Shown piece by piece: positions 11,855 to 59,662 of a DNA stretch of 64,000 bases. A program made the translations under genes and the position numbers. The stretch is from Phallusia mammillata (taxonomy: Eukaryota). The stretch is taken from contig OZ281499.1 of the NCBI GenBank assembly GCA_965637545.1, forward strand, positions 2,170,001-2,234,000. Reading direction: 5' to 3'. Numbering within the stretch: position 1 is the first letter of the stretch; every line of letters starts with the position of its first letter. Under the pieces are notes generated by a model. It was given only the letters and a program-made list of their open reading frames with translations. It had not been told where the DNA came from and searched no databases.

Positions 11855-11952
11855 TCACCAGCAGTAACGGCTGCAGGCGCGGCAAGATACGTGGAAGTGG
11901 CGACGCGTCGTGCGCTTCACAATTGTGTGGAGGAGACCGTTCGATAGTTCGT
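11855..11952 (-). CDS. Following coding exon: (D)ELSNGLLHTIVKRTTRRHFHVSCRACSRYCW-stop
   Basis: Very strong acceptor ttttcttcttttcttttcacAG; phase 1 matches the 14618 donor. A perfect GTAAGT donor lies further on at 11632. Confidence 0.5.
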
Positions 11953-14617: not shown

Positions 14618-14718
14618 CTTGGTCAGAAATGCTCCGTTTAAGTAACCGCGGATTGCAGTAGTTTGACATGTACGCGCATTTGAATTTAATCAGGCCTTCG
14701 CACTTGCTGACTCGAATC
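14618..14718 (-). CDS. Exon of candidate Cys-rich peptide gene: IRVSKCEGLIKFKCAYMSNYCNPRLLKRSISDQ
   Basis: Strong acceptor ttgttttatttttggcAG and donor CAAG|GTGAGT; only one frame is open (phase 2 to 1). Confidence 0.6.
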
Positions 14719-19118: not shown

Positions 19119-19832
19119 CTGGTTAAGGTTGGACTCGGTCAAGCGCAAGTACCTGGAAACTTAGTTGGTTTGGTTTTGGTTTAAACTTACAGTTGCATGG
19201 CTGACGTAGCATCCCCATGACGTTTGAAACCACCGCAGACTATACACAACATTGCGAATACCTTTGCAAGAATATTGTGTTTGTAGTGCATAAGTAAGAC
19301 ATTTTGGGGTGAACATTTCAAAGCAACGCCTCGTATTGTTTTATTTTATATTGACACATTACATGTTGTTAACAACATGAGTAAGACATTTTGGGGTGAA
19401 CATTTCAAAGCAACGCCTCGTATTGTTTTATTTTATATTGGCACATTACATGTTGTTGACAACATGAGTAAGACATTTTGGGGTGAACATTTCAAAGCAA
19501 CGCCTCATATGGCTTTATTTTATATTGGCACATTACATGTTGTTGACAACATGAGTAAGACATTTTGGGGTGAACATTTCAAAGCAACGCCTCGTATTGT
19601 TTTATTTTATATTGGCACATTACATGTTGTTGACAACATGAGTAAGACATTTTGGGGTGAACATTTCAAAGCAACGCCTCGTATTGCTTTATTTTATATT
19701 GACACATTACATGTTGTTAACAACATAATTCCTTAAGAAGCTGCGTCAGCCATGCAACTGTAAGTTTAAACCAAAACCAAACATGCTAAGTTTCCAGGTA
19801 CTTGCGCTTGACCGAGGCCAAACTTTAACCAG
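19119..19832. mobile_element. Fold-back/TIR element with ~92-bp inverted repeats
   Basis: 19119-19210 is the near-perfect reverse complement of 19740-19832; TTAA sits 4 bp inside each end; flanks TATCCC/TATCTC. Confidence 0.75.
19294..19726. repeat. 87-bp tandem array (about 5 units)
   Basis: GTAAGACATTTTGGGGTG starts at 19294, 19381, 19468, 19555, 19642; a diverged sixth unit lies at about 19866-19955. Confidence 0.95.
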
Positions 19833-38995: not shown

Positions 38996-39499
38996 ACTAA
39001 CAAACAATATTTGTTTTTGTAGTGTAGAAAACGATCTGTTTGGTCACTCTAAATTTTGCGTACGCTGTACATGAACACGCCCTGCTAATTCTTGCTGCCA
39101 TACCGCCGTGCCAGCAGACTATACCAAGGGCTCAACGGCCGGTGGCACCACATGGCGTCTGCATCATCTTACGATAACATTCCTTGTCAGCGTTTAGCGG
39201 ATTAACTCATTTGTTGCACTCGAGTCCGTCAAACCCCGCTTTACAACTTTCCCGCTTTGATTATGACGAACTGAATCCAAATAGGCTTCAAGAAGACATT
39301 AAGCCCCCATCGTCCCAATAACTAGGGGTCCCAGCGACAGGGGTGCGTCTGTAGTTACCCAAGGTCCCCACTATCGCGAGCAGAAATCACCCACTTAGTT
39401 AAACATGTGTTGATGCCCAAAACAATCAGTTGAAGGTTTGCACAGGGATTAATGCACAGTTGAACTCTGACTTTGCAGACCACCACTTTTTCAACACAG

Positions 39500-39584
39500 A
39501 CCTCGGAATAGGAATTTTGATTGGACTCGCCGTCGGAACTTGTCTCCTCTTCGCCTTTCTGTCTTTCAAATGCTGCAAAAAGAG
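39500..39584 (+). CDS. TM exon of adaptor-like gene: (D)LGIGILIGLAVGTCLLFAFLSFKCCKK(R)
   Basis: Acceptor tttttcaacacAG, donor GTATGT; phase 1 to 2; hydrophobic helix then CC and basic cluster. Confidence 0.85.
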
Positions 39585-42500
39585 GTATGTTATAGTGGCT
39601 CTTGTCTCATTTTTAAAGCGTACATCGCAGTTTCACCAAAATATCCGTAAAATACTTAATTCCATTTGAATAAGGTACTGTTGGGGCTATTAAGGCGAAA
39701 TGTATTTATCTCATAATCTTAAGGACAAATGACTCGATGTTCTTCATGAACTTACATCTACTAATTCTATTTGTAAACGATTGACTGACAGAATGATATT
39801 CTGTATACGACATAGGAGGGATAGATTCAATGCAAAATTCTGATACACTCAAGATTTTTACCTAACAAAATTGCAATGTAAATCCCCTTTTTACCTCTCT
39901 TTGACGAAAAAATGTCATATGAGTTTTGAACTGTGTTTGAAAATAATTACAAACAAATCGTCCCTTTTCAGCAATCAAGTATTTTGTTGACGAACTCATT
40001 TCCTTTTAAACTTTTTGCCTCGGAAAATAAGAATAGATTGCATTTGCGGGCTTGGTATGTTTACGCAAAATACTGAAGTTTAATGTCAAACCCAGAAGCA
40101 GCTGCACCTTATCGATCGTCATGGCTGACTCCTCAAACCGTCGATTCCTCTATAACCTTGTAGTTTCAATTAATAAGGGCGGGTGCTATACTTGGGTGCA
40201 GTGTGGTGTAAACGGTGGTTAGAGTGTTTGTAGTTTATACTTTATGCTGTGGTTTGTGGAGTAAACTAATAACTTATCCAGACTTTTGCTGCCAGGGGTG
40301 CGACAGAAACCCAATAAAGTTCCTCTGACAAATGTACTTTTTACACCAACTTTATGGTCAAGCCGTTTTAAATAGGGTAAAGGCCCTAAAATTTTCAAAC
40401 AATTATGTACTTTTCGAGTTCAATTCTTGATATTTTTGAATTTTTGTTCGAATTTCGTGTACATCTGCACACAAATTTGTATAAAATCTAATCCGCCTAT
40501 GAGGTTGCTTCCGCTAATTTGACTTGCATCACAGCAAATTTACCTTTGGTCACAGCCAATTTAACTGACGTCATGGGCCTCACAACAAGGCCTCTTTCAA
40601 AATAATGCTAATCCCCACTTACGATTATGTCAAAGTGTCTCACGCATGTTTCACTCACTTCATCGCCACTACTCGTTGTGCATTCCAAAATGAACTCTCA
40701 CTCCTAATTAGCAATGCTTTGAGCGTTCCTAAACCCGCCAGCAATAACAACACATAAGTTAACACAACGGGTTTTCGCCTGTCAACTGGTGACGATTCGA
40801 ATGCTTTGTTGTTGTTGTTTGCTTTGGCTTGTCGTCTTGTTTGTCAACAGTGACTATAGTGATGTCTACCTGTTGCATTTTTTCTGCTACTGTCAGCGGT
40901 CTTGTCTTGATTATGTTGTATTGTGGAGGTGAAATCATGTTTGTTGGTTTAGGACTTTAGGCTGACTTCTGTAAAGTCTTAATTAACTAGTTTCGGCGCA
41001 TTTGTGTAGGCTCTGCTATTTGTGGCATTTTTGACAGATTTGTCCGCTTATATGTGACTAATTCAAACGATTACTTTTCTTATACAACCAAATATCCCTG
41101 TTTAAGGAGTAGGTATATATGATGTTTTATATTAACAGTCTTTGTTTTATATAGAAACCCCAAAGCTGCATTACGTGGTATACTGTTGTTCATACTTATA
41201 GCTATATACAATATCTCATCCGTAAGCCGCAATGTAATTACTGTTAAAAATTATGGTTTAGGTAAGGTGTTTTCTTAAAAATCAACAACATATACATCAG
41301 AGATACCAATAAACTTGTCTGTTTGGTCGTAGCATACATTTGTTAAGGTTTAGCAGAAAACAATTTTAACAGAAGAATAGAGCAAATATCAGAGTACAAG
41401 ATTTCTCAAAATTTCTGATCAAAACAAGTTACAAATATAAAGTTCAATGGTTTCCTTCGCGGAACGGCTGGATCAGGCAACGTAGCATTACGTCAAACCG
41501 CATGTTACGCACACAAACCTGCAAAACAACCTTCTGTTGCGACGTAATGCAGATGTTCGATGCAAATTCTGCACAGCATCTTAATCTATGACGTCAACCG
41601 CCTGAACGTAAGGCGAGGTTGGCTTCGTTGACTCATCATTCGAAACCGCTGACCTCTCGTTTGTTCGTCTGTTTGTAAACAGAGGTAAAAAGGCTTTAGT
41701 GCATTGTATACCTTGTCAGACCGCACATGCACACCGCCCGCACCACTACAGCGGGTTATCAAGGAAGCTTAGTGCAACCAACCGCGTCGAATAGGGTTTA
41801 AATTTGCCCCAGACAGTTAACCACTATCTATAAAATTGACCCAAGTGCTTTATATCAAATTGTATGTATTTCAGTTTTGTTTAAAAGACTGTGCATGCAT
41901 CGTCAAATAAAATACGGCTTCTGTTTTCAGGTTTTTTATTGATGTACTTGTTTGATTTTAAAACCGAGCCCATTAATGCAAATCAGTATTTCGTTTTGTC
42001 TTGAAGTTATAGGTTGTAAAACTTACATCACAACATTGAAATTGTGGAAATAGCTAAAAATGTCTTAATGATAAAACAATATCATTTATGGTGGCAATAA
42101 ATTAGCCTTGAAAAATAGCCCGATTCGCAACAGTACAATTGAGCAACTGCCTTGCCAAACAGCAATGTGTGTAATACCGCTCAGTGTTGGGCGTTTTTCT
42201 GTTTATGTTCCTCTTTTGCCAGAGCTTAAGCAATTGCTAATAAACGTTTAATGACGTGTATCCAGTTGATACTCCTAGGCCCAAATGTGGAAAAATATAG
42301 TTTTGTATGGGTAAAGGTTAACTGGGCCAGAAAAAAATAACTTTTCAGCCACGCAATCCAATTAGGCCAGTTTTTTAAGCCAGATATCCAGCAAAAACGT
42401 TATTTTTAATGCATGGCTGCCAATACAGATATTTCAATGTATAAGCACGGCGGCTGTACGACTGTAGGTTGTGCACTATGGTTTAAAATATTTTTCATAT

Positions 42501-45500
42501 TTACATGGTCGAAGCCATAAACAGAACGTCAATATTACGTCAAGACTCCACGTCAATTGGAACGATTTAGTGTAGTTTGTCAATCATTGTAGAAAAAAGG
42601 GTGTAACGCAGTTAAGGGCCACTAATTTAAAGTGGCAGGCAAAACATGATGCAATACTAAAGGTTACTTAAATTAGGATGAACCCAAATGACTTTAACCC
42701 TTCCTCAAATTGGTCAGGGTTTCTCAAAAATTCGGACAACAAAATAAATGATTCATTCTTACCGGCGTTGCACTTTCTAACGAGATATTTATATCACTGT
42801 CGTCATGTATTCACTATGCTAACTGTTTATTTAATGGGCTGTGCTCCTATAACGTCAAACCGCTGTTTTTTTTTCAAATAAGCATCTTTCGCAATTTTGG
42901 TTTAAAATAATTGTTCTGATTCACCAACGGAATGCTACTTCGTGTATTTTAATCTTCGTCGATAAAAGATTAAATTTTTATCTATTGTTTCTACCGAAAC
43001 TGACGTGGTCGATTGTTGTGTAAACACCAAAATGAATGCCGGAAAGTTTTGTGAATAGAATATTTATCATGTCGTGGTCTATGAATAATCATAGCTATCC
43101 GTCCCTACAAGTTTGTTGACCCTACATAGCCTTAAAAACCGATTGTCATCATGAATTATTTTCCCTGTTTTGCCCCGTGGTTATAAGGTATTAAATAATT
43201 TCAATTTCAGCCTGTTTTTTTTATCTGATAAACGTTTGTCCTTACGTTTTTTTTTTGATGATTGATTAGCACATGCAAGTCGTATTACTTCAATCCAAAA
43301 CTCAATATACCCTTGGCCAAACAGAATCAGTCGGTTTGCTATTTTTATGCACGAAATATATATTTTTGAGATTGTATAGGGTTGGTATTTGTGTAATATG
43401 TTTCATGGAGATGACATGTTACTTAAACATGGTTATTTACCAAAGAAATGATTTAGAAACCAATTTTTATGTAATTATAAGTTCTGAGCATTCGAACACA
43501 CCCAAAATTCGGGAGATTTTTAAGTATTGGTTGGTTTTGCTTCTGTTACATAAACACTACAGTATGCGATTAACCTAATTCGTCTGTTTTTCAAAGTAAC
43601 TTTGCACATTTTACGCTTTAAAGTAAATGTTAAAGTTGTTTCAAAAAAAGGCAATCGCAAACTTGACAGTTCTGAAGTGCGTTTTCTCCAAGCCATTGAT
43701 CTTCAATCGCTTTTGCAGCCACCAGGGCATAAAGTTCAAGTATAATCCAACCTAACCTATTTAAATACGCTCAGCTGCCTTCCAAACTGCCTGAAAGTAT
43801 TTGGTTGTGAAGATCATGGCTCGGGAACGGGATATTTGCCAAATTTGCTCGTTAGCTTTACATCATAAAGAATTCTAACCAACTGTGGATGCTGTTTTGT
43901 AAACTACACAAAGCCTTTAAATCTTTGGTTATGAGAAAATTTGTTAATAAAAAAATACCACATGTGTAGCAATCTATAGTGCCGAAAAACTGCATAAAAA
44001 TGCGGCAATACATTATAACCCACTGTGGTGATATGTACATTGGCTCACAAGTTTCTAACAAAATCACCAAAAACAGTTTGTAAAAACTAATCATTTCACA
44101 ATCATTAGTGTCAAATAACTGCATGGTGATATATTATTTGGCACAGTAATTTTCCAGAGCATTTTCGCATGACTACTTCCCACAATGAACCACATTTTGT
44201 GGCGAAAAAGTGACTTTGCAGATTTTAATTTGGTTGTTCAACGTACAATGTCCCATGAGTTCAACGTAAGTGTCCGATATGTTGATATAAATTGCAAATT
44301 TTCTCAATAAATCATCAGATTCTTGTTCCTGGCTGCACACCCACAAAATAATTCGTCGAATAGGTTGCGCATAATCCGCCATGTGATAATGGTATTGGTG
44401 ATTTTGCAGTCACCACTTAAATAAAGTTAAAGTTTTTTAAATAAACGCAAAAATTCCGAACATACATGCCGTAAGCTCTAAAACTGGACTTAATTCAAAC
44501 GTAAACAATTCCACTTCCCAGCATTTTATATCGATCTATTACGTCACCATGGCCACAGTGACGTCATAGTGAACCTGTGGATTGAGCTAGTGGAGATGTT
44601 CTGTGTATGTTTGTTGTCAGTCAGATGTAATCTTACTTTTAAGGCTTTGCGGGGGTTGAATTTGATTTGGAACTTGGCTCGCGTTTTACTCGACAGCTGT
44701 GCCTCCCGCCTCGATGTTTGTATGCATGTTTTTTGCGCAATAAAATCCAGCCAATCAACTTAATCCAGTCTGCTTTAAAAGTGTATCACGTAAAAACATG
44801 CCTTTTTTAGAAGTTGAAATAAATAGAGTCCGTGGGGGGGGGGGGGGGGCATGAAAATTAAGGTTCGAAATTGAAATGTGCAATTACGTTTCAATTTTGT
44901 TACTTTACAGCCAAAATAATGCAGCAGTTTGCAGAGTATGCTCTCAAATTTCTGACACAAAAAGGGCTCATGTAAGTATGACTAGAGTTCAAAAGAGGTC
45001 AATATAATGTCTCGCATGCACCAGCATACCTTTCCTCAACATGGTATTTGCGTATTAAAGATACAATAAACCTCGGTTAATCCGGACCCGTTTGAACCAA
45101 ACGATTTGTCCGAACTAGGCGAAGATCCGGATTAACCGATGCCGATTAGTTAAAGCCTTACCACATTACAAATCAATTGTACCTCCAATTTTGTCGGAAT
45201 TGGGCGAAGATCCGGATTAACCGAATCCGGTCGAACCGAGGTTTACTTTTTTTGTTTGGGTAGATTTTATTTCTTACAACCAAATGCACAACAACAGAAA
45301 ATAACTTCTAACTACAATTCCAGAATCGCCAAACGTCGCATGAAAAACTTCCAGCAATCGCACAAGAAGAAAAAAAGAGACGACAAAATCGAATTGTGCG
45401 TCACAGATGACCCTGATGACGTCATAAAGGAAGAAGTCGAACGTCCCGCGACGGCGAAATCGGTGCCCTTGCCCGACAGGAACCGTCGCAGCGGCCGTGA

Positions 45501-48500
45501 TAATAACGGGAAAACCACCGAACCACAAGGCCGCGCGACAAGTCACGGAAAATCCTCGCCCCCTAGGTCTTTGTCTTCGGGCAAAAGCTGTGCAACTGTG
45601 CTTGAAAATCTCACTTACGACGACATTGTTACTTCGGTTAAAGGTGAGTCACTCATGTGCAGACGTGATGTGTACCACGTGTGTTGGGGTGGAGATTTAG
45701 GGGCACGATTTTTTTCTATTTGAACAAGTAAATCCCTGTTGAGTTGCTTTTTTTATAGACACTGACGATGCTTGTGGAAATGTATGTGACAGATTTTAAC
45801 ATGCAAATGAACTTTTTAAAGGGGATTTAGTGGCACGTCTTTTTTTCTATTTGAATGAGTAAATCTTTTTTGTTGTGATTTTTTATAGCCACTGGCGATG
45901 CTTTTGCATTAGAATATGTTTGTCTACAGATTTTATTCTGCAAATGAACTTTTTAAAGTGGATTTAGTGGCACGTTTTTTTTTTCTATTTGATTAAGTAA
46001 AACCCTTTTATAATAGACACTGAAGATGCTTTTTCTTGCAAGTATATTTCTCTACATATTTAACCTGCAAATAAACTTTTCCAAGCCTGCGGTTTAAATA
46101 AGTAATACACAAAATTTCGAAACGTTGCATTAGTATCCTCGCTGTAGTTTTAAACTCAAACAGGGCCAACGATATCTTTGTGCATTAACCCATGATGTAC
46201 TTTTGCAGTCAAATTTTATTTTGGTTTTGAATTGATCCAAATTTTTGCAGCGTCCTACTGAAACGCGAATAAATAATATATCTGTGAATAAGAAACCGAG
46301 GAATGACCTCTAGGAAATTGACCTTCAAATCAGTATGAAGCGACAGCAACCTGGCAATGTTACGCATCAAAATTTTCAAAAAAATTCAGACCAATTGAAA
46401 TTGTTTTCGGCCGGTTATTTGAACTTTCGCTAACTACCTCATATCCCCTTGATGGAAACCTCACTAAAGTCTAGAAATTTTACGTGTGATCCTTATCACT
46501 AAGGATACTGGTTAGCCAGTCTGTAACGTGCGTCGTTTCACCGGACATATAAAAACAACATTTATTTAATGTCTGCGAGCCCGGGTTTCCGAAATATATT
46601 TTACGGCAAAACGTCGCCCCCGTAGACAACAACACTTTTTCGGGTTCAACCTGCAGCCGTCTATGATTCGCATTGAAACTGTCTGCAACTTTTTTCCCCA
46701 ACAGTTGACATCAACCATAGAGAAAAGGACAACAAGAATGTTCGCGTCGCCCCCCAACGCCAACCGGAAGCTGTCTATGACGTAGGAGATACGTCACCAA
46801 CCGCTGTAGAGTATATGAACGTCGGAAGCAAGTTCACACGACCCAGACAGTAGGTTGTTTTTCACTCTTATTGTTGTATTTAGGTTTTTATTTGCTTCTT
46901 TCAAACAATGTGCTTTACTATTGTACCATTAACACTTTTTATCTTTTTTTCCCAATCCTGTTTCCTAATTGATTCATGACGTCACCATGCCCATTATGAC
47001 GTCATAGGCTAAGCGGAGATGTTCTGCGTATGTTTGTCAGGTGCATTAACACTTTTTATCTGCTTTCAAATCCAGTTTTTGTAAACTTGCAAGGAGTTTA
47101 TGTGGTGCGGTTCGAATGTTTTGCAACTAAAAGTGGCAGATACGAGATTAGAACCAGCAACCTTTCAATAACATCTGCACCAACCGGTCATCTTACCCGC
47201 TTATGTCTTTTTTACCCACGAAACTTGATATCAATAGTCCATGCCCCTAATGTACAGAGATATCGTATCTTGGTTTTAAGGGCTTGGGTGACCCTAAAAA
47301 GGCTGTTTTGTTTCGTTTTTTTTTTTGCCCGCAAAACCCAGGTGTGATGAAACTTATTGCTGATGGCATTTGAGTTTCCTATTTTCTAGTTTTGTAAAAG
47401 ATTGTTATTGTCGATTTTTTTTAGAGCAGGTTCATATTAAGTCACTGGTTGCTTGTGCAGCAAAACGCTTTCGCTAGAGCCATAAACTGTATGAAGCAAT
47501 TCCTTAAAGTGAATAAAACCTCTCAAAACGCTATGTAAAGGTCTAGTTTATTTTCTGTTGGTTGTGTACGTTCAATACAAGTGCGGTGCAGTAGCTGATG
47601 AATTTCATAACCCTGCGGTCGCGATGTATTTAACGTCGGAAGGTTTGAACCTCAAAATTTGTTTTGAACATTTCGCGCGAAGATTGCTTGGTGCTCAGCG
47701 GAAAAACACAACGATTATTATTTCCTGTTGTTTCGATCACCACCACGCCGCAGTGGATTTGTTGCGTCCGGAGCGGCAGCGTATAGTGCAAAGCGACGCA
47801 GGATTTCCTGTTGTGGTTATCACCTGTAAATCTTATCATTCGTATCTGATTGAGAGTAAAGAGAAAATTTTGACCCTCAATTTTCAGACAAAAGTGAATA
47901 CGACACCATAACTTGCTATGTTAATGGGAACCAGAGTAAATTGCCTGTAACGAGGTCTTGGAAGTGACCAAGCATCTACTAAGCCTTTCAAAATTGCGAA
48001 TGGGGGACACAGAAACGGCTAATGGGTCATAAACTGGTTGACCATGACCTAATATGGACAATATATTATAGGTGTTCCGGCGCCTTAATCTCTATCTCGA
48101 GAAATTTATGAAAATTTTCGGGGACTTACGATGTCCCACGCATTTTGTGAAAATTCTCTTAACTGTCTCTGGGAGCAACGCGAGTGCCACGTGGTATTGT
48201 CATCTGTGGCGTCATAAGCGACTTAGCAAAAATTAGCTTTTCTCCGATATTCGTTTTATGGGGGTGGTAATGTCGTCTGAGAAAGTGGTGTTTTATGACA
48301 AATAGTCATGAGTTTCACTACGCGGACTTTGCACCAAAAAACAACAACAGTTTCTAGTACACATTTATAAAAAGTAGGTTTATTCCAGTCTACTCTATAT
48401 CTATATAGTACCTAGAATGTTATTTATATATTTTATATTTTAATAACATGACCAGACACATCACAGGTTTGAAAATTTCCAGTCTAAAATCAGTTAGCTA

Positions 48501-51500
48501 TCGTATGAAGAACAAATATATCTCTCTTATGCAAGGAAATGGGTTGCTAGGATATAAATAACTATTTTGTCTAACAACCATGAGTTTGAAAACGTACGGC
48601 AAAAACATGCAAATAAAAGCCATAAAATAACAGTTTTTTAAACCTAAAACCAATCAAGAAGTCTTTGTTGCTATCTAATCTTTGTAAGTTGCTTGCAACA
48701 TTATAGTTTTTGTCAAGTTATGATTTCCCCATTACTTGGAGCTTTCATGGACAAACTAATCCACGTTGGGCGTTTTTCACTAATCTCGTGACAGCATTGG
48801 ATTACCACAAGCGAAAGTTGTAACTTTACAAATTGCCTGAGGTTGTTTATATGGCACCAACTTGCTGGCGGGACGGAATGCGGTTGCTACCGTTTCAACT
48901 TGAAGAGGTCGCCCCGAATAATCCCGGTTTAAACCCTGGAAAAGCTTGTTAAAGGGCAAGTTTATGGTGCTGCTGGCTATAGAGGTTGATACACCCTTGT
49001 ATACGTGATACGGGCTCCAGACAGTATATAGTGAGCAACCAATTCTGTTATATCAATGGTTTCCAACGTTTTGGTTAGCACTGGACCACTTTAAAAATTG
49101 TAGTAGGTTTACGGACAGTCACGTAAAGTTAACGTAAAGCTCCATTTGAAAACTTTCTTTAAATGCTTGCATTCCCCCTGGAACCGCTCTACAGGCCCAA
49201 ATAGTAATAGGTACCTAAAATTTGGGACCACTGTGTTAGAGCAGCAATCTTAATTTGCAAAAACGTATACATTTATTAAGTTTAATTGATTGAAACAAGT
49301 TTATATGTTTTCAATTTTGACCCACCTGGTTTAGAAATATAAACCAATTCATAAACTGGCATCTAAATTTCTTGTCATGTCATAAAATAAACCGCCAAAC
49401 TAGACTCGTGTGCAAGTATAACGTAACAATGTCAGTCGTCAAGGCAATTGTCACGTGACTGATGATTCATTTTTCCACTGGCCACCCGCGTATTGTTCGA
49501 ATTATCGCGTAATATCGATGTTTCGGGGATCGGTATCGATTTCCGGGAGTATCGTGGCTGATTGTGATGATATAAGCTTGTTGTTTTTCCGGTGGCCAAT
49601 CGATCACAAACATTTTGACAGCTAGATTGTGAAACAACCTTTAAGTCTACAAACAACATCCTTATTCGGTGAAGTCAAATAAGTTTATACTCTGTGTGAA
49701 TTTATGTGAAGCTTTGTTTTTTTTCAGCTTCTGGGATTGTTTTTATAATCAACATTTTTCTACTCGAGACAAATCTTATCTTTGCTAGGATTAGACTCAA
49801 CTTAAAATCTAAACGTATTGTAGCAAAACAACTTTGAAGTCACATCCGTTATTATTATTTATATATTTTTTAAATGCTAAACCGACGTAAAAAACATTGG
49901 TATTGAGTAACAAGTTGATTACAATCCAGCCATTTATAACTTTTTGCAACGCAAAAGTATTATTTTATGCTTTAAGCAGTGACTTGAGACATTTTTTTTT
50001 CTTTGGGAAAACTCCTGCCAAATGAATGTGAATTTAGAAGAAGCTTTCAGGGTTCCCGGAAACTTACACAATATGCAAACTGAAAACCGTTTGTCAAAGT
50101 TGAAATTAAAGTTATGGCGTCGGAGTCTTTTTGCTGAACGTTTGTTCCAGTATATACGTAAAGTCAAAGAACTCAAGTATACAAATTAATCATCAGTGTA
50201 ACCATAACTCGGTGTACTAAATACCTCCCCTTACTTGATCTCAGCCATCAAAACAAACACTTCTGGTCTTTAATAACCTTTTTATGTCCCATTGTTACGT
50301 CCATAGTTGCGTCACAAAGAGCATCCGCTTCCCCCCGGAAATCATTCTTGGCATCCAGCCGGTAATAGCATCCGGATAAAATGGGCCGAGATGCATATAA
50401 ACCGACCATTACTGCAATTGAATGCGACTGCGGCCGTTATGAGGAAAGTTTTTTCGCAACAGGTGTATGTTTACTTGGAAAACCAGTGTTCTCTTAAATT
50501 AAAACATTTCCCAACCTTTTTGGCTAGCGAAAACCTTGACAAGACCAAAAAATATTGCGTCGTCCAGTGGCTGATTAACAAACGTTCTCAGCGAATACTG
50601 TATTCAACATTAATTAAATGAGTTGAGTTGGGTTTAATGACACTAAAAAAACTATAACAACCACCAAGCGGTAAATAGCTGCGCAACGCTGAAACGTTAT
50701 GGAGCGCGAAACAGTGAAGGGCACAATTGGTGGATAGCGGTACAACGCGCTGCAGCTACACTGTATTATAAAGCTGTATGTGACAGGAGCTCCAGAGTGT
50801 GAGTTTGGCGCACTGTGAGTATAACAATAGTTCACTGCAAGGAATTAGCGTAAAATATAGGTAAATAATATCGTAACTAATATTACCAAGGTGAATAAAC
50901 ACTTCAGCAGTGCTCGGCGGCACTCATGAAATATAAAAAATCCACCCTCTAGTTGAAACCAGCGCCTTATAATGTACAAATGCGTTTATGCACAGTTTTG
51001 TTGGATACAGCTTTCATGCACTGAGTCAAGTTCGTTTATCAGGTCGGCCCTGGTGTATTACGATCTGCGAATCGTGAGCGATAATCACAATCTACAACGC
51101 TTCCTGGTGTCCGATTAATGTGATAGGCCCCCAAAGTGCAAAACTGTGTCGTTTTAACGACCTTAGGCTGCTTGGGACTTATATATTGGTGCAGAGAAAC
51201 GTGTAGCGACTGGTGGTTTAACTATCGAAAAGAGGGCGTTTGAACTTCAGTAATTGTTCGGGCTAATTTTTTGTTTCAATTTTGGGGCAACAGCTTAGAT
51301 ATTTTCGTTTTTGGGAGAATTTAACTGTTTGTTTGTTCGTTTCGTTTTTAGAGCAGTTTCCAAACAAAGTTCCACTTACAATAAACTAAAAACCAATAGT
51401 GTTTGAGAAGCAAAGCGAAAAGCGATTTTAGCGTCGTTATGGTTACATGCGTTTTCTCGCTTTTTTGCAAATTCAACGAAACTGACAATCTTTTTGCGTT

Positions 51501-54500
51501 GCAAGCATCATCACCTCAAAAATGTTGCAAGCTTAGTATAAAGGTTTAAAGCAAAGGTGTTTGCAACATTTTTGCATACGCGGGCCAAAATGTACTGATA
51601 TAGTGCGGAGGCGGGCCGCATTGATGGTCATGCAATAACATGGCAGTGCTAGGCAAAAGTCAAACACAATGATTTTGTCTCTGTACGTAACAATGCCTAT
51701 CTTAGTAATAAACTAACAACTATCAACGTTTAATGTAACAACTCTGTGGTACAAAAAGGGATTTAACGCATACATTCCTTCCGGTCGATCAAAATAAAAC
51801 ACATGTCGCGGGCCGCTCAAAAGTTGCTCGAGGGCCGGATGTGGCCCGCGGGCTGTAGGTTGCCCACCCCTGGTTTAAAGAGTCCGTCAGCCTTGGAACG
51901 TTTCTTCAAATATATGCTTACCCAACGCATTTCTGCGCTATTTTCGCACGTATTCACTTTGGGCAACCGTAAGTTAAATGAAGTGTCACTTACAAAAAAA
52001 CTGAAAAAAAGATTATTTTTACGAAGGAAAGCGAAAAATACAATTCTCACATTTTTGGTTAAATGTGGTTTCTTGTTTATTTGCAAATTCCATGAAACTG
52101 TATTTGACAGAACACGTTTTTGCTAACCTAGTGGTATAGGAAAAATAGTCCGCCATTCCTTTGCAACGTTTCCTCCAATACATACTTACCTTACACATTT
52201 TTGCGTTATGGCAACCAGTATTCACTTTAGGCAATGCTAAATTACCACCAATTCCGTGTGTTATTGTCAGGTTACAGCGGTCGAGCAGAAAGCGTTCCTA
52301 ACGACGGGGTAACACTTGCTAATGGGCGCCGTGCTCGCGCCCTGCCATCAAATGCGTTTGCTGGCTTACGGGGTGATCCGTTATGCAAACCGCAACCCTT
52401 TACAAGTATTGCCACGACAACCGCCGAAGCTTACCCTATGACGTCACAATGTGTTATGGCTCTTTGCGTTCTTTTATTTCAAACCTTTGTCCTACTCTCC
52501 CGCCATTAAACGTGAATGCGGTCTTTAGTCTATTGTGCCTTTCTAAAGTGCGTTATTCGATATTTAGAGGGTGAACTATGGTTAAGAAGATGTTTTCGTG
52601 GTGCTGTTGGTTTTGAAAGTTCGGCCAGACGTGGCTTACCGAGTTTGTTATCCAAACTTATAACACGGAACTCCATATAATTAGGTGTCTGAATTTCAGC
52701 AATGATGTCATTTTTCCGCGTTTTTTTGGGTTTTGCAAACAATGCCAAAAATTCTACAGAACTTTATCATTTCCTCGTCCTGACTTCCAAACTAAAACAT
52801 ATTTTGTCAAATATTTTGGTAAATTGATCCTGGGAATTATTCCCAATTCTGTTGCAATTCTCTTAACAATTTCCACCTCTCATCTTGTTTACCACAAGTT
52901 TGACAACATTTATTTCCACGTTAAAATCTGTTAAATTCTATTTGAATAAGGCACTGATACTTAGTCACAAAAAAACACGGATTTAAAAAGTAGCTTTACT
53001 AAGGTAAAAATTGCCAGCGATGTAGAATAAAACGTATTTATTTTATTAATCAAACGTTTCGACAAAAACAGATGTCATCATCGGAGAAATAAGGCACAAA
53101 CGGCGTTATATCTTTTATAGTTAAAGTAGACGAAGAATAAGACATTGAGAATAGTTTGATAGCGATACATATTTGTCTTAAATGAGAAAGCCTACAGATT
53201 GGAACCTGGAAATAAACATATTCTGTTTTTTAATGCGTAAACTTGAAAATATTCAAGTTATATAATGGCAAAAGAGGTATAAATAAATCCCCTTTTATTG
53301 CCCTTTATGGTCACTAAAGATGTTTTTTTAGCGAAATATATTTGTTCTTTATATGATTGCAACTGATCTTAACCCGGAAGTAAAGATTCCCCAACTTGTG
53401 AGAGGAAAAATATTAGTGAATATTTTGCCAGAGCCAAGCTAATGTTTAGCAATGGCAGAATGCAGTTGTGTAATGGAAAACCTAAAACTCACTGTTATTC
53501 AGGCGGGAGCACCCTTACGAGACTATTGCTTATGACTCGAGCGGTGTGAAGATAGTGGGTCGTCTTAAGCCTCCGCCAAGTCCGATTCAGATTAAACGTC
53601 AATCAAAAAGCGAAGGTGGGTGACGTCACATATATTATGACGTCATATATATCGCTTGCATATTGAAACAACGCACTAGACTAGAAGTTTCGAAGTACAG
53701 TTCTACACTGCGAAATGCCAATTCTTGCATAGGACCTGTCCCTTATTTTTTAAACATTTTTGTGAAAATACTTCAATTGACTATGTTTAACGATGAATAT
53801 AACGGCCCAAATATACGTAAAAAGCGACATGCTTTATTAATTATTATTTAAACGTTTCGGCAAAAGCTCATGCCATCATCACTGTTATAAAGGCCCCCAC
53901 CCGTTCATATACACTTGAGTCACGTGAAGGAATGATAAAAGGTGCGAAATAAGCGTCGCTTAAAAACGACAGATAAAAAGGTGCCCAGAAGCGAGGTGTG
54001 CCGTTATTTTCATCATTAAACTTATGAACAGGTACATAGTGTTTCAATTGATTATGTTTTTGAAGTCGCATATTTAATGTGCAATTTTGTTTTTTGAATG
54101 GAGAGCCTGTGGATTACTGGACATTACAAAATATTTTAGTTTAATGCAATTGGAACTCTAAGTTGGAGCAGTGAACTTATTTGTGACGTAACAGCCAATT
54201 GTTTGTTCCATTTTGATTCAAAAACCTCCCCTTTTTGTAGACGTGACCATCTTTCCATTTAACCCTGAACAACCGAACTACGAAGATATCGACGTTAAGC
54301 CCCGTTCCAAAACCACCCGAGTAAATCCGAAAAATCGCGAACCCTCAATAACCAAAACGTCCGGGCCTAAACTTCTTCCAAAGCCTAATAGCGTCGGGCT
54401 TGCTTCCCGTTCTTCCTTATGCGTGAACCCGACTTCGGCCATCGAGCCGTCGCCGTATCTTCAGCGGACTTGGAGTGCACCGAACACCGCCACGTTGGAT

Positions 54501-57500
54501 GTCCGCCCTCGAAGTCGAGCGGCTCCTGAAAGTCCTCAGCAGAAAAGTTCGAGAAGCAAAGCGTTATCCCCTAAACTTCGTTTATCCAAAAATAAAGTAG
54601 GTTTCCATCTTTTGTTGTTAGCCGATGTCAATCTTAAAAATCAATTTAAAATCAGTATCAATCTGGAGATTTTTAACCTTTTTTAACCACTACATTCGTT
54701 TCGGAATCCGCTGCTTTCGTTTTTTGGGCATTTGTTTAGGGATTTCAAGTTTCTACCACTAAAAAGTAATCGTGGTTAAGGGCACATACACTGAAAAAGT
54801 TTGTTTGCTGATAACCAGTTTTGTCATTGACCCAAAGAAAAAAAATAAGTTATGAGTTGGGTAGAAGTAATGATTTTCCTTATTCTGGAGAAAGTTATGA
54901 CAATTTTACAAAAAACTTTTCGAAAATATTTGTATTTCAGCAAGCAATGTTAAATAGGTACACAAGACACAGACTTAAAGAGTAGTTTTACTAAAAAAAT
55001 TGCCAGTGATGTACAATATAACGTAGACATTTTATTAGGCAAACTTGGCCCAAAAAAATTGTCAAATGTTGGATAGTTTATTATTGATATATAAACCTGT
55101 GCCATACACTAAATTTTCACGCAAAAAATAGTCCTTCTATGTAATCCACGCCACTGTGGTGGTTTTGCAAACAGTTGTTTTTTCTTGTGTTGAAAAAATT
55201 TGTTTTTTGTCACAAATTATGGGGCAACCATCTAGCATAATACCGAACCTAAGGACGCAAGCCGAAAATGAGGACATTTCTTAGATATTAGGAAGGTATT
55301 GCAACCCTGCTTTTAACCATTATATTTCCTCTGAAACAAATTAAAACGTGACCTCGCTTTTACCTTTAGCCATATTTGGTTTGTGGCCGCGCCCACGTTT
55401 TGTTTTCTGGCTTGCCAGGATTACACAAATACCTGACACAACAATAACGCATTTTGTGCCCCAAAATAGACTGCACTTTTGAAGTTAGAGGGCAGCAAAG
55501 GCTAGATTTGACAGCGTTTTACGTCACTAACCCTCTGATTGGATTACAACATTTGGTTTAGTGGATTTTGGCTGACTCGAAGGGTAACCTACTTCACGAG
55601 CCTTTGGGTTAGGGTCTTTCTGCGGGTTACTTAACTAATTTACCCAACCTCTGGCTTAATTGTGGTTTCTGCATTCCCTTTGTTGATTGAACTGCTACTG
55701 ATGGATTAGTTTGTGGTGTCGAAACGAAGTGGTCCTTATGTTGTGGGAAACCGTTCACCGCTGTTTGCCCAAAAAATTGTGGCATTTTAAATACGATTAG
55801 CGGAAGGGAAAGGGTCAAAACCTATTTGAATTTGGCTCTAGTGCAGTGTTCTTCAGTCTTCAGCCAAACCTTGAAGTTTTAAGAGGCGAAATTTTTGCAT
55901 GCTTAAGGACGCAGAAAAAAAATTTTTTGGCAGTAATTAAATGCCAGTTTTAGGCTCCAGCCAAGCGTTTAATTCCTTCCTAAAATGTCTGCAATTTGGC
56001 TTTGTGCAAAGTTATGGCGAGGAAATAAAGAACTACGCACTTTTTCAAGGTTTAGAACTGTTAACCCAGTTTAAACCAACTGTTTGTTTTTTTCATATAG
56101 CAATCTACCTAATTAAAAAACATACTTTTCTGTTTTAGGAGAAATATGCCATACAACCTTAGTTTTAACAATCTTAACAGAAAGCATGACTTTGTTCATC
56201 CAAAAAAGACAAATTGTAGAAATAATAACAGTATAAGCACCCTTTACAGAACCAATGTGTTTTTCAATGCCCACCACGTAAATCTACGTACTTTTAATCG
56301 TTAAAAAGTCCAAATCAACATTAGAAAACATCTACCTAATGAAAATAACACATTTTTCTGGACAGTTTTAAGAGAAATTGGCCGTACAACAAGTGGTGGA
56401 AATTATTTTTACCTAAAAATAAGATCAAAACATAAAAATACAGACGGTATGGACATGGCCACTCTTTCATATAACGTATTTGTTATATTACCTTCTCACC
56501 AAGCAAACCCAGTTTATTGCTTCTCCTAAATGCGTGTGGTCCTGTCAAGTCAAATCCGTAACTGATTAACGTAAGCCGTGTTCACCCTGTTCGTATCAGA
56601 CAAAAATCCTACTTAAAAAATGCATCCCATGCCTTAGCTGTGAGCCGGGATTAACTGTTTCCAAATCTCTGACTTAAACTGCATATCAACGTACAGTATC
56701 TCGTTTAACGAGGTCAGGTGTCGAAATGATTTGGGTTTTACTGCGTTGAACTTTCTACAAGTTTAACTTTGATGCAACACAAATTGTTTACATGTGCCGG
56801 AGTACACATTTGTCATTAGCTTTTAAACCAAAAATGCCCATTTTTAACAATTACAATGAGTTTTTACGCATATTAATGTACATGACTCGTTAAATAATTT
56901 GAAAAAAAACTCTACATAATTTTAATGAGGAAAATAACGACCAAATTAGACGAAAAAAGCAACATGCTTTATTATTCAAACGTTTCGGCAAACTTTGCAT
57001 AAAGTTGTGTTGTAAATTTGTGTAAAAATAGTCAAAAAACGATATTTTATTTACCACATTGTAGTGGGATTATTATTGATTATGTTTGTTTTGATTTGTT
57101 TAGTATTGAAACTAAAGAAATAAATGCAAAATGTAACGTATCGTTGTGAATTTGAAACACCAACGAAAATGTTTGAAAGCATTACGGTACTTTAGAACCG
57201 GCCGCCTCGTGCGTCCTTACCAAAATATTTACCCCTGAACCAAACGCTACAAGCTGATACTCGCAGATCAAAGCGCGCATTGCTGAAGTTATCGAGCGAA
57301 AGGAGGAACTGATTGGCGAGCTGTCCAAGAAGAACGAGGTTAATCCAAAGTGTCCACAGCTCAGGTAAGTGACCCTGTATCAATTACTGGACATCACAGG
57401 CTGCTTGGGGTTTGCAAGCTAATTTTCCCACCTTTTCAACTGCCCCGTTCCCACCTTTGTTGTTTTGGGGTTTAATTTGCTCGCGTCGGTTTACAAATTC

Positions 57501-59662
57501 GAAAAATGTTGTGTTGTGCAAAAGTGTGGTTGTTTGAAGTGGCTAAAAAGTGAAAGTTAGATGATGTTATTTTCATCTATACCGAAAACTTTACGCTAAA
57601 TTGGAATCTACAAGTTTTTTTTTGCTTTGAAACAAAATTTTATTGGAAAATGAACTGACAAGTGTATTTATAAAAACGTTCGGGGCCATTTAAAACTTTT
57701 GGGAAAGAATAATTTTGGTTATTAGTGCATTTAAACCTGTGGGTTTCTTTCAGAACAAACTAAAATGCAACATTTGAGAAAGTTTTTGTTTTATCATATT
57801 CTTTCTTAGAAACAAAAATTAATAAAAAAATTCATTTACGGGTTTATTTATCGTTTTATGCAAAACAAAGCGGTCTGATGAAAATTTGTGAGAACCTTTT
57901 TAACTCTTTTCCAACAGACACAAAGAAAATCGCTTCTACTGCGAAAAGCCGCGCATGCGCAGACGCATCAAACGCAAAGTTCGCAAGAAGCGACGCGTTT
58001 TGGACGAAAGACGCCGCGTTGGGATTCAACTTATGAGGTCACGTGACGACAACGCCGCTCGGGGGCGCCAGGGAGGCGACGATGACGTCACGGGCCAGCA
58101 GGAGGGCCACAATCGCTGGCCGCTGCCGGGGGTCTACTTTGAGAGCAGCAGCGGAAGCGGAAGTGATGTATGGCGGTTTAGGTCGCCCTTGTTGCGCAGC
58201 GAGGCATATCGCGACGCGGCCAAGCGTGAAGCATCTTTGCTTGAAGACATCTGGTGTCATTTGGACGAAATTACGCAACGATCGAATCGTATCAAAGGTA
58301 AATATGTCATCGCCCCGATAAGAAAACTTGTTTTTTCCGCTTCGGCGCTCGAGTGTGATTCAGGTGCTACGTGATTTACGTCACATAGAGGGTAATTGTG
58401 ACGCTTAAAAGTGATTTTAACCCGCTACATTAAGGCGTGTTCCTGCCTGGCCCAGCGAATCATTACATAATCCCTGCTATATCAGGAGGTGACTCTAAAC
58501 TCGTTTTACCGCAGAATCCTATTCTTCACGTCGCGCTTCGGACTCACTCTCTAGTTTGAGCGATGATATAATTATCCACCATAACACCGACGCAGTTGGA
58601 CGACAACTAAGCCCAGCGACAGGCGACACGCGGTTTGCAACACGCGACAGTACATCCGACCGCGGCTACTTCACCTACAAGTACTTGGCCTCCGGAGGCG
58701 CCATGCGAAGGGTGTTGGGACGCCAGCGGCGCAGGAACGGCCCGATGACACGTCAGAGGCCACACAGTTGCGTAATCATGACGTCAAGCGGCATGAGTAC
58801 TCTCACAGACACGGGTACGGGCGCTTGGGTGTCGAGTACCGCTACTCGCTGCAGCAGTTTCTCGAGTTCCAGAAACAACTCGCTCTTTGACTCCGCGGCA
58901 CTCGCGCGGCATGAACGTTTCGACTTCAACAGATTCGTGATTCCAAAAATAACTTTCAGCACTCCTAGTGACGTCACAAACGGAATTAATGACGTTAGTG
59001 GCACAGAGAAGCGGGAAAAGTCGTATTTGTCCGTTCTGGATTTGTATTTAGGCAGCACAGCAGATTCGGATCCGATTTACGAGCAGTTATCCAATTGTTT
59101 GACGCCGAAATCTGACTGTGCTAAGGATCGTGAGCGCTCACTAACGGCCAATGATTCTGTGCGGGTTAAGGGCGACAGGGCGGGTTACGCTGTGATAACA
59201 AAGCGAGCTTGTGTGCAAGAGGCAACCTACGTTGAAGTTCACCATTCACAAGACGAACAAACTACAAATGCGACAAAATTGATCAACGATGTTACCGATG
59301 TAAAACAAGACGAAAACATTTCAGATTCCGAACGCACCTCCGACACGATACGCAACGGATCGGTCGGTTCCATCGATGACGTCATAGTTACGTCACACAC
59401 TGACGTCATAGTTACGTCACACATTGACGTCACCGGTCCTAAGCGACAGGCGTTGGTGGAGCGAAGCTCGGGCAAACATTACGTAGTGGTCGCGCCTGCG
59501 TTGTCTCGCAAACGCGTGACGTCATCGGACGACAGCATGGGTGACGTCATAGCTCGTGGTGACGTCAGTGATTGCGTCAAAGTCCGAGGTTCCAAGGAAG
59601 GGGATGGTCTGAGTTGTGTTGAAGATAATGGGCTGTGCGTGTTTATGGAAATGAGTGTTTGA
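39500..59662 (+). CDS. Multi-exon single-pass transmembrane protein with long Tyr-motif-rich cytoplasmic tail (transmembrane-adaptor-like); N-terminal exon(s) unresolved
   Basis: Eight phase-compatible GT-AG exons: 39500-39584, 45324-45643, 46705-46849, 53503-53615, 54241-54596, 57267-57364, 57918-58297, 58515-59662 (stop TGA). About 881 aa from the TM exon onward, with no in-frame stop across any junction. TM LGIGILIGLAVGTCLLFAFLSF is followed by KCCKKRIAKRR. Confidence 0.8.
45064..45248. mobile_element. Tc1/pogo (Tigger-like) MITE
   Basis: TA|CAATAAACCTCGG...CCGAGGTTTACT; internal CCGGATTAACCG repeats. Confidence 0.7.
45324..45643 (+). CDS. Adaptor-like gene exon (IAKRRMKNF...LTYDDIVTSVK)
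   Basis: Acceptor ttccAG, donor GTGAGT; phase 2 to 1; part of ORF 45256-45723. Confidence 0.85.
45695..46080. repeat. Degenerate ~130-bp tandem repeat (3 units), intronic
   Basis: GATTTAG(G/T)GGCACG...TTTTCTATTTGA at about 45695, 45824, 45961. Confidence 0.85.
46705..46849 (+). CDS. Adaptor-like gene exon (VDINHR...AVYDVG...VEYMNV...RPR)
   Basis: Acceptor tttttccccaacAG, donor GTAGGT; phase 1 to 2. Confidence 0.8.
49054..49233. mobile_element. hAT-type MITE
   Basis: Degenerate TIR CAATGGTTTCCAA / TTGGGACCACTG; TSD TGTTATAT/TGTTAGAG (6/8). Confidence 0.65.
51552..51872. mobile_element. hAT MITE (GGGCCG family)
   Basis: Right TIR GTTGCCCACCCCTG, degenerate left TIR; exact TSD GTTTAAAG. Confidence 0.85.
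53048..53092 (-). ncRNA. Variant hammerhead motif
   Basis: CCGATGAT-GACA...TGTC-GAAACGTT; its tail (52960-53050) is duplicated at about 54950-55050. Confidence 0.4.
53503..53615 (+). CDS. Adaptor-like gene exon (REHPYETIAYDSS...KPPPSP...KSE)
   Basis: Acceptor gttattcAG, donor GTGGGT; the phase 2 to 1 exon needed to bridge 46849 and 54241. Confidence 0.7.
53770..53890 (-). mobile_element. Second pLTR family with decayed hammerhead (GTGATGAT-GGCA..TGCC-GAAACGTT)
   Basis: Tail AATAAAGCATGTCGC; related copies at 5810-5975 (+, with a 49-bp internal duplication) and 56945-56995 (-). Confidence 0.5.
54241..54596 (+). CDS. Adaptor-like gene exon (DVTIFPFNPEQPNYEDI...PKLLPKP...LSKNK)
   Basis: Acceptor cccctttttgtAG, donor GTAGGT; phase 1 to 0; part of ORF 54213-54686. 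Confidence 0.8.
57267..57364 (+). CDS. Adaptor-like gene exon, coiled-coil-like (IKARIAEVIERKEELIGELSKKNEVNPKCPQLR)
   Basis: Acceptor ctcgcAG, perfect donor CAG|GTAAGT; phase 0 to 2. Confidence 0.75.
57918..58297 (+). CDS. Adaptor-like gene exon (basic RRRIKRKVRKKRR stretch...SLLEDIWCHLDEITQRSNRIK)
   Basis: Acceptor ctcttttccaacAG, donor GTAAAT; phase 2 to 1; overlaps ORF 57955-58374. Confidence 0.85.
58515..59662 (+). CDS. Terminal coding exon of adaptor-like gene (Ser/Thr/Asp-rich; YEQL, YAVI, YVEV, YVVV)
   Basis: Acceptor ttttaccgcAG in phase 1; continues into the 368-aa ORF 58556-59662; ATTAAA about 120 nt after the stop. Confidence 0.85.

What the first reader, a model, noticed from the sequence alone, without database searches (positions are those of the whole stretch)
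39500..59662. Large LAT/PAG-like transmembrane signalling adaptor hidden across 8 exons
Seen: eight exons join in phase into about 881 aa. A TM helix is followed directly by KCCKKR, then a ~850-aa low-complexity tail with no recognisable catalytic domain. The tail carries spaced tyrosine motifs (LTYDDI, AVYDVG, VEYMNV, HPYETI, PNYEDI, PIYEQL, AGYAVI, ATYVEV, KHYVVV) and PxxP stretches (KPPPSP, PKLLPKP). Established: a TM, juxtamembrane palmitoylated cysteines and a multi-pTyr tail define vertebrate raft-targeted transmembrane adaptors (LAT, NTAL, PAG1, LIME); YxN binds the Grb2 SH2; LTYDDI and VEYMNV fit the (I/V/L/S)xYxx(I/V/L) ITIM consensus. Inference: a lineage-specific invertebrate-chordate adaptor or immune-type receptor subunit, much longer than the vertebrate ones. 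The ORF track shows only fragments of it.
Basis: partly seen in the sequence, partly recalled or inferred. Interest (0 to 1): 0.75.

Follow-up and report, generated by a model that had tools for sequence, protein, structure and literature searches.

The report
Tunicate membrane-anchored disordered docking protein
A real, transcribed sea-squirt gene encodes a single-pass membrane protein with a floppy inner tail of about 870 residues that carries a few conserved tyrosine and other docking motifs; it resembles vertebrate LAT/PAG adaptors in layout only, shows no detectable kinship with them, and its outer end and function are still unknown.

Summary
Spliced RNA contigs from three runs confirm four junctions: E4-E5, E5-E5b, E5b-E6 and E6-E7. 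The TM exon, E2 and E4-E7 recur in the same order and splice phases on contigs of a related tunicate, so this is one conserved gene. Exon 3, which carries AVYDVG and VEYMNV, has no RNA or conservation support. One RNA contig instead joins E4 to a diverged copy of an unnoticed 28-nt exon at 50787-50814. The first coding exon is not found, so the size of the ectodomain is open. Only four of the nine listed Tyr motifs are conserved: YDD[IM], YETI, Y[ED]QL and YA[VL][IV]. The best-conserved parts are a coiled-coil, polybasic-helix and acidic-helix module, a Ser/Thr block and the C-terminus LCVFMEM[SN]V. Pfam, PDB, ESM Atlas and a 1.84-billion-protein HMMER search found no known family. My verdict is an undescribed tunicate-restricted membrane scaffold that is PAG-like in architecture but not shown to be a LAT/PAG relative or an immune adaptor.

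The parts
38378..38420 (+). Candidate first coding exon (low confidence, about 0.25). An ATG with G at -3 is followed by a signal-peptide-like start (MKK plus a 10-residue hydrophobic run) and a phase-1 GT after 14 codons.
   Evidence: The relative has a similar 14-codon hydrophobic ATG ORF with a phase-1 GT 2.2 kb upstream of its TM exon. Both donors are weak, and there is no RNA or sequence-similarity support.
39479..39584 (+). E1, the TM exon. It encodes about 8 outer residues, the TM helix (39502-39567) and KCCKKR (39568-39585, with its last base from E2). Its donor is AG|GTATGT. It has no in-frame ATG, so at least one coding exon lies upstream.
   Evidence: The homologous exon in the relative scores tblastn E=1.3e-6 with 47% identity and the same two splice phases, and lies 6.7 kb upstream of the E2 homologue.
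45264..45643 (+). E2, 380 nt. It is basic and low in complexity, and ends in a conserved block around LTYDDI (45565-45627).
   Evidence: It has a strong acceptor and an AAG|GTGAGT donor, and the coding score is best in this frame. The homologue in the relative scores E=2e-11 with the same phases at both ends.
46705..46849 (+). E3, 145 nt, carrying AVYDVG and VEYMNV. It is predicted only.
   Evidence: It has a strong acceptor and an ACA|GTAGGT donor, the same hexamer as the confirmed E5 donor, and is in phase on both sides. The coding score is weakly positive. An in-frame TAG follows at once if the exon is not spliced.
50787..50814 (+). An RNA contig of run X2 joins a diverged 30-nt version of it (25 of 30 bases alike, with a 2-nt indel) directly to E4.
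   Evidence: One search gave the loose end at 53503. Searches found no near-exact match in the window. Searches found the diverged copy. The 28-nt form is in frame only as E2-E3b-E4, and the 30-nt form only after an exon that ends like E3.
53503..53615 (+). E4, 113 nt, with HPYETI (conserved as NAYETI) and KPPPSP (not conserved).
   Evidence: The acceptor and donor are used in RNA contigs. The homologue in the relative has the same acceptor phase.
54241..54596 (+). E5, 356 nt. PNYEDI and PKLLPKP in its first half are not conserved. The second half is conserved, with SPYL and RTWSAP (54465-54482).
   Evidence: RNA contigs are.
57267..57364 (+). E5b, 98 nt, a coiled-coil-like helix.
   Evidence: RNA contigs are, the sequence. 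It is conserved in the relative at 52%.
57918..58297 (+). E6, 380 nt. It holds a polybasic helix (57952-58017), the NRWPLPGVYFESSSG motif (58111-58155) and an acidic amphipathic helix (58228-58275).
   Evidence: RNA contigs are. Homologues at 89, 63 and 48% identity come from three other sources. AlphaFold predicts two helices with pLDDT up to 95.
58515..59662 (+). E7, the last exon, 381 codons plus stop. It holds a conserved Ser/Thr block (58778-58882), PIYEQL and AGYAVI (both conserved), ATYVEV and KHYVVV (not conserved), and the conserved C-terminus LCVFMEMSV (59633-59659). The RNA contig ends near 59700.
   Evidence: AlphaFold mean pLDDT is 28.

Best explanation
This is one + strand gene of at least nine coding exons (about 38.4 or earlier to 59.7 kb). 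It encodes an N-out, C-in single-pass membrane protein. The protein has a conserved TM helix and a juxtamembrane Cys and Lys/Arg cluster. It also has a cytoplasmic tail of about 870 residues that is mostly disordered. I read it as a membrane-anchored docking scaffold of an undescribed, tunicate-restricted family. The anchor, possibly reinforced by S-acylation of the conserved Cys, would hold the tail at the inner membrane face. Partners would bind short conserved elements in the tail. These are three Y-[DE]-x-[ILM] motifs plus a YA[VL][IV] motif, which could be SH2 sites after phosphorylation or YxxPhi sorting signals. There is also an RTWSAP site of 14-3-3 type and a coiled-coil, polybasic-helix and acidic-helix module. 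A Ser/Thr-rich block and a hydrophobic C-terminus (M-x-V) could serve as a class II PDZ ligand. Shown: the gene, four splice junctions, expression, conservation and synteny, and the absence of known domains. Inferred: the topology, lipidation, every binding function, and the E1-E2-E3/E3b-E4 joins.
For: Spliced contigs in three RNA runs confirm E4 through E7. E1, E2, E4, E5, E5b, E6 and E7 are colinear on one strand in a relative, with identical splice phases. The positive-inside flank KCCKKR and a mean hydropathy of 2.4 over 19 residues fit a TM helix. No Pfam, PDB or Atlas hit was found. E7 has pLDDT below 50 throughout, and E6 forms two confident helices without a compact fold. The conserved motifs are listed. 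There are 4 Y-[DE]-x-[ILMV] motifs in 867 tail residues against about 0.5 expected from my rough composition estimate.
Against: The first coding exon is unknown, so a real ectodomain, and thus a receptor, cannot be excluded. No RNA evidence links the TM exons to E4-E7. The one contig that crosses the E4 acceptor carries a diverged microexon, and another retains 58 nt of intron. More than half of the listed Tyr motifs are not conserved. Tyr conservation in E7 (6 of 10) is only mildly above the overall 39% identity. No binding function was tested. The AlphaFold alignments hold only 2 to 4 sequences.
Confidence: 0.55

Rival explanations
1. One reading: a raft-targeted, palmitoylated phosphotyrosine adaptor of the LAT/PAG type. 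It would have a tiny ectodomain and be phosphorylated by Src-family kinases. It would then recruit SH2 proteins (Src-family, Csk, Grb2) and, like PAG, a PDZ linker through its C-terminus.
For: The layout matches the published definition of such adaptors and of PAG. That definition covers an N-terminal TM, juxtamembrane Cys, a long tail with YEEI/V-type tyrosines, Pro-rich stretches and a C-terminal PDZ ligand (PMC4861716 and PMC3492796). YDD[IM], YETI and Y[ED]QL are conserved. No conserved ectodomain exon lies within 4.9 kb upstream of the relative's TM exon. A candidate first exon would leave only about 10 outer residues.
Against: No sequence similarity to the LAT, PAG, LAX, NTAL or LIME families was found. 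Only one Cys is conserved. The only YxN lies in the unverified, unconserved E3. The ITIM fit is not conserved. The best-conserved modules have no counterpart in LAT or PAG. Phosphorylation, raft targeting and immune expression are all untested.
Confidence: 0.2
2. It is a type I receptor or adhesion protein. Unseen upstream exons would encode a signal peptide and a sizeable ectodomain, and the tail would be that protein's signalling and scaffolding part.
For: E1 has no in-frame ATG and begins in intron phase 1, the phase usual for ectodomain exons. There are 39 kb of + strand sequence upstream.
Against: No conserved exon was found between 39.5 kb of the window and 4.9 kb upstream of the relative's TM exon, although the short TM exon itself was detected. 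No domain-like + strand ORF appears upstream.
Confidence: 0.25
3. There are two products. E4-E7 would be expressed mainly from another 5' end, as a soluble isoform or from a start just upstream of E4. E1-E3 would form a separate small TM protein ending at the TAG that follows E3, or an alternative 5' end.
For: The X2 contig has 243 nt before E4 whose last 30 nt are not E3. The X1 contig starts in the intron 58 nt before E4. E3 is followed at once by an in-frame stop if it is left unspliced.
Against: E1, E2 and E4 keep the same order, strand and compatible phases in a species whose tail is only 33-63% identical. E4 and E5 hold no Met, so a start near E4 would lose about 300 residues. The 30-nt piece matches an exon-like element inside the E3-E4 intron and is in frame after E3.
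Confidence: 0.12
4. It is a membrane-tethered signalling precursor. The tail would be released by proteolysis, and the conserved polybasic helix would act as a nuclear import signal, as in neuregulin or Notch-ligand intracellular domains.
For: A strongly conserved run of about 20 residues, rich in Lys/Arg, sits in a confident helix.
Against: No cleavage site, DNA-binding domain or transcription domain was found. A polybasic helix fits lipid, calmodulin or coiled-coil partners equally well.
Confidence: 0.08

Closest known systems
PAG1/Cbp (vertebrate transmembrane adaptor)
   Same: Both have an N-terminal single TM followed by Cys and a long domain-free tail. Both carry several tyrosines of the Y-E-x-I/V type, Pro-rich stretches and a C-terminal hydrophobic tail that could bind a PDZ domain. 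In PAG this is VTRL, which binds EBP50 (PMC4861716, PMC3492796, PMC2213442).
   Different: No detectable sequence similarity was found. The tail is about twice as long. Only one juxtamembrane Cys is conserved. There is a conserved coiled-coil, polybasic-helix and acidic-helix module and a Ser/Thr block that are absent from my recollection of PAG. The ectodomain length is unknown. Phosphorylation and Csk binding are untested.
LAT / NTAL / LIME / LAX (vertebrate transmembrane adaptors)
   Same: Both have a TM, juxtamembrane Cys and a Tyr-bearing disordered tail.
   Different: Those proteins are 200-400 residues long and are built around several YxN Grb2 sites. Here the single YxN (VEYMNV) sits in an unverified exon that is not conserved.
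Single-pass receptors with long disordered tails and PDZ ligands (for example ephrin-B, syndecans, neuregulin)
   Same: Both have a single TM, a basic juxtamembrane stretch, conserved tail tyrosines and a C-terminal PDZ-type ending.
   Different: Those have defined ectodomains and recognised families. Here no ectodomain is known and no family matches.

Membership tests
Transmembrane adaptor proteins (TRAPs: LAT, NTAL, PAG, LIME, LAX), a class by architecture | The extracellular part is only a few residues long and has no ligand-binding domain (PMC4861716). | tested here: inconclusive
   E1 encodes about 8 outer residues but no start codon. The first exon was not found. No conserved upstream exon appears in 4.9 kb of the relative. 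The candidate start exon at 38378 is weak.
TRAPs | A single transmembrane helix near the N-terminus. | tested here: met
   The hydrophobic stretch of 22 residues at 39502-39567 has a positive-inside flank and is conserved in the relative.
TRAPs (raft-targeted subgroup) | A palmitoylated juxtamembrane CxxC or CC motif. | not testable with these tools
   The motif is KCCKKR here and KCLKKR in the relative, so one Cys is conserved. Acylation itself needs an experiment.
TRAPs | A long tail with several tyrosine motifs that are phosphorylated and bind SH2 proteins. | tested here: inconclusive
   The motifs are present. YDD[IM], YETI, Y[ED]QL and YA[VL][IV] are conserved. PNYEDI, ATYVEV and KHYVVV are not, and the two motifs in E3 are unverified. 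Phosphorylation is not testable here.
Pfam families LAT, PAG, LAX, NTAL/LAT2, LIME1 (homology) | Sequence similarity to the family profile. | tested here: not met
   hmmscan of every exon, and of the relative's last exon, at E<=10 gave none of these families. The HMMER search of the last exon against 1.84 billion proteins gave one true relative, an unnamed metagenome ORF.
ITIM-bearing inhibitory receptors | A conserved (I/V/L/S)xYxx(I/V/L) motif in the tail. | tested here: not met
   LTYDDI fits, but the relative has FAYDDM. VEYMNV lies in E3, which has no homologue in the relative.

The most novel reading that the evidence does not exclude
This is a pre-vertebrate working counterpart of PAG/Cbp-type adaptors. 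It would be either an independent invention or an orthologue diverged beyond recognition. A lipid-anchored, tiny-ectodomain protein would present YEEI-like sites to Src-family and Csk kinases and tie them to a PDZ scaffold. This would place membrane-adaptor control of Src signalling before the origin of vertebrate adaptive immunity.
Probability: 0.17. Interest if true: 0.65.

Novelty: new member of a known kind. Interest (0 to 1): 0.4.

Why it matters
Src-family kinases and Csk are conserved across animals (PMC3492796). The membrane adaptors that position them are, to my knowledge, described only in vertebrates. A conserved tunicate membrane protein with PAG-like architecture is therefore a concrete candidate to test for that role in the closest invertebrate relatives of vertebrates. 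More modestly, it adds an expressed, unannotated gene family with a well-defined set of conserved short motifs and a helical module that can be tested for partners. It also shows that an ORF track alone misses such genes.

Tried and rejected
- **E2 searches.** The word-based protein search found nothing, and neither did a JGI metagenome scan. E2 was found only through synteny on L012.
- **The 30-nt upstream piece of the X2 contig.** There was no match in the window at up to 3 mismatches, and no exact 12-mer. I first read this as an exon outside the window. A peptide-level scan then found the diverged copy at 50787-50814.
- **E3 and E3b in the relative.** tblastn, tblastx, blastn and local alignment found none. 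A 97-nt exon-like piece at L012 7370-7466 has good splice sites, but it gives a stop after the strong E2 donor there, so I left it open.
- **Domain and fold searches.** Sequence searches of PDB and the ESM Atlas gave no usable hit. Weak Pfam hits (DUF6724, EME1-MUS81_C, Bud3_N) fall far below their cut-offs and I rejected them as chance. P0002 from the big search is a repeat artefact.
- **Coding score.** It is driven by composition: the antisense strand of E1 also scores well. I therefore use it only as weak support for E2.
- **TM-like stretches.** They are not rare in this AT-rich DNA, with 16 in six frames. The TM exon rests on its conservation, not on hydropathy alone.
- **Other hydrophobic + strand ORFs upstream** (12315, 22117, 24599, 35577) gave nothing usable.
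- **Not searched.** A distant relative among long proteins is therefore not excluded.
Full report
**Observation.** A hydrophobic stretch of 22 residues (39502-39567) is followed at once by KCCKKR and then by a donor, AG|GTATGT. I reconstructed eight exons with AG/GT borders: 39479-39584, 45264-45643, 46705-46849, 53503-53615, 54241-54596, 57267-57364, 57918-58297 and 58515-59659 plus stop. Phase bookkeeping closes exactly on the stop codon. The total is 2723 nt, about 907 codons. No exon has a Pfam domain at E<=10. The window has no N runs. The joined protein was never built for a search.

**Transcripts.** One run search found three runs (X1-X3) that hold about the exonic share of 53450-59449, and DNA runs that hold most of it. 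Laid on that stretch, the X1-X3 contigs cover only the exons. They are spliced at 53615|54241, 54596|57267, 57364|57918 and 58297|58515, after shifting the aligner's ambiguous 2-3 bases to GT-AG. The DNA run X5 is colinear. So X1-X3 are RNA, the gene is expressed, and the last four junctions are confirmed, including the 98-nt exon at 57267. The longest contig ends near 59700, just after the stop.

**The E4 acceptor.**
- In X2, the contig continues upstream of 53503 for 243 nt. Its last 30 nt are not the end of E3, and have no match in the window at up to 3 mismatches or as exact 12-mers.
- A peptide-level scan then found a diverged copy at 50787-50814, inside the E3-E4 intron. It is 25 of 30 bases alike with a 2-nt indel, is preceded by AG and is followed by ACT|GTGAGT.
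- The X2 contig also carries two private differences, 31 and 37 nt into E4. The X3 contig starts right after them. A second, diverged version of this short region therefore exists, either an allele or a paralogue.
- The 28-nt reference form is in frame only as E2-E3b-E4. The 30-nt RNA form is in frame only after an exon that ends with two spare bases, as E3 does. I take this as indirect support for E3 plus a cassette microexon, but it is inference.
- The X1 contig instead retains 58 nt of intron before E4.

**Relatives.**
- The last exon has one true relative among 5.8 billion (word search) and 1.84 billion (HMMER) proteins. It is P0001, an unnamed ORF on metagenome and Logan contigs, 33-39% identical, starting at the same splice acceptor. 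The second hit was a repeat artefact.
- E6 has relatives at 89, 63 and 48% identity.
- By walking contigs I tiled the orthologous gene of the 63% species. Its order on one strand is the TM exon, 6.7 kb, E2, 3.5 kb, E4, 6 kb, E5, E5b, E6, 3.4 kb, E7.
- The TM exon is 47% identical, with conserved FF..D before the helix and SFKC.KK after it. It ends with the same AG|GT split of an Arg codon that E2 completes.
- E2 keeps both phases and a conserved block around the tyrosine, RSLSS.KSCATVL.N..YDD.
- E4 keeps its acceptor phase and RE..YETI.
- This synteny is the main evidence that the TM exon and the tail belong to one gene.
- E3 and E3b have no detectable homologue there.
- Notes from other agents call this genome a tunicate. 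I did not test that myself.

**What is conserved.**
- PNYEDI, ATYVEV and KHYVVV are not conserved, and the two motifs in E3 cannot be judged. KPPPSP is not conserved.
- Six of the ten tyrosines in E7 are invariant, against 39% identity overall. This is a mild excess.
- The best-conserved parts are others:
  - the second half of E5, with SPYL and RTWSAP, which has the R-x-x-S-x-P form of 14-3-3 sites (my reading);
  - the E5b helix;
  - the E6 polybasic run, NRWPLPGVYFESSSG and EASLLE[DE]IW.HLDE;
  - a 35-residue Ser/Thr block, IP.IT[FL][ST], and the C-terminus LCVFMEM[SN]V in E7.
- AlphaFold gives E7 a mean pLDDT of 28, and gives E6 two long helices with pLDDT up to 95 but no compact fold. The alignments hold only 2 and 4 sequences, so low confidence is weak evidence of disorder.

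**N-terminus.**
- E1 has no in-frame ATG and starts in phase 1, so a coding exon lies upstream.
- tblastx between 39.7 kb of the window and the 5.1 kb that end with the relative's TM exon found only the TM exon itself.
- A candidate start lies at 38378. It has a good Kozak context, a signal-peptide-like start and a phase-1 GT after 14 codons. A similar 14-codon ORF lies upstream of the relative's TM exon. Both donors are weak, however. I give this candidate about 0.25.
- If it is right, the outer part is about 10 residues long.

**Interpretation.** The gene encodes an N-out, C-in single-pass protein with a very long, mostly disordered tail studded with a few conserved short elements. I think a membrane-anchored docking scaffold is the most likely function.

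The architecture parallels the published description of transmembrane adaptors, and of PAG in particular. PAG has a short outer part, a TM, juxtamembrane palmitoyl cysteines, YEEI/V-type tyrosines, Pro-rich stretches and a C-terminal PDZ ligand that binds EBP50 (PMC4861716, PMC3492796 and PMC2213442).

That is a likeness in how it may work, not membership. There is no sequence similarity, only one Cys is conserved, the ITIM and Grb2-type motifs are not conserved, and the dominant conserved module has no PAG counterpart. The Y-x-x-hydrophobic motifs could equally be endocytic sorting signals. A receptor with an undetected ectodomain remains a serious rival.

**Limits.**
- There is no read evidence for E1-E3.
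- The joined protein was not searched.
- The E5b/E6 module was compared only with proteins of 69-220 aa and with Pfam and PDB.
- Tissue of expression is unknown.

Noticed in passing
window, whole; clusters at 11814-11857, 46977-47004, 53621-53645, 59377-59432, 59517-59567: The CRE palindrome TGACGTCA occurs 25 times against 0.85 expected. Nine copies lie inside coding exons E2, E6 and E7, where they produce DVT/DVI peptides that are not conserved in the relative. Other readers noted the same excess elsewhere in this genome.
   Followed up: partly
window 61746-63485, minus strand: Pieces of another gene: a TM helix followed by CYCC and basic residues, and two ORF pieces with weak SEA-domain matches (Pfam E 0.006-0.01, below the cut-off).
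   Followed up: partly
window 55528-55848: Short unspliced RNA contigs in X1 and X2, at low depth, lie inside the E5-E5b intron. Contigs give no strand. They could be an intronic transcript, a repeat or a pre-mRNA remnant.
   Followed up: no
window 53650-54050 and 56850-57050: Very high word depth in the DNA run X5 (tens of thousands against about 85), with many rearranged joints, marks high-copy repeats in two introns. They are also present in the RNA contigs.
   Followed up: no
window 11632-11960 and 11855-14718: A GC-rich patch with three evenly spaced TGACGTCA sites looks like a promoter. Whether it is a separate gene or the 5' end of the gene studied here was not tested.
   Followed up: no
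L017 minus strand, about 10,780 (just before the relative's TM exon): The relative has an in-frame ATG six codons before its TM-exon acceptor. It would give a 15-residue outer part without any upstream exon. The window has no such ATG, so I took it for chance.
   Followed up: partly
window 19287-19733, + strand: A tandem repeat shows up as a 149-codon open frame with a repeated unit of about 29 residues.
   Followed up: no
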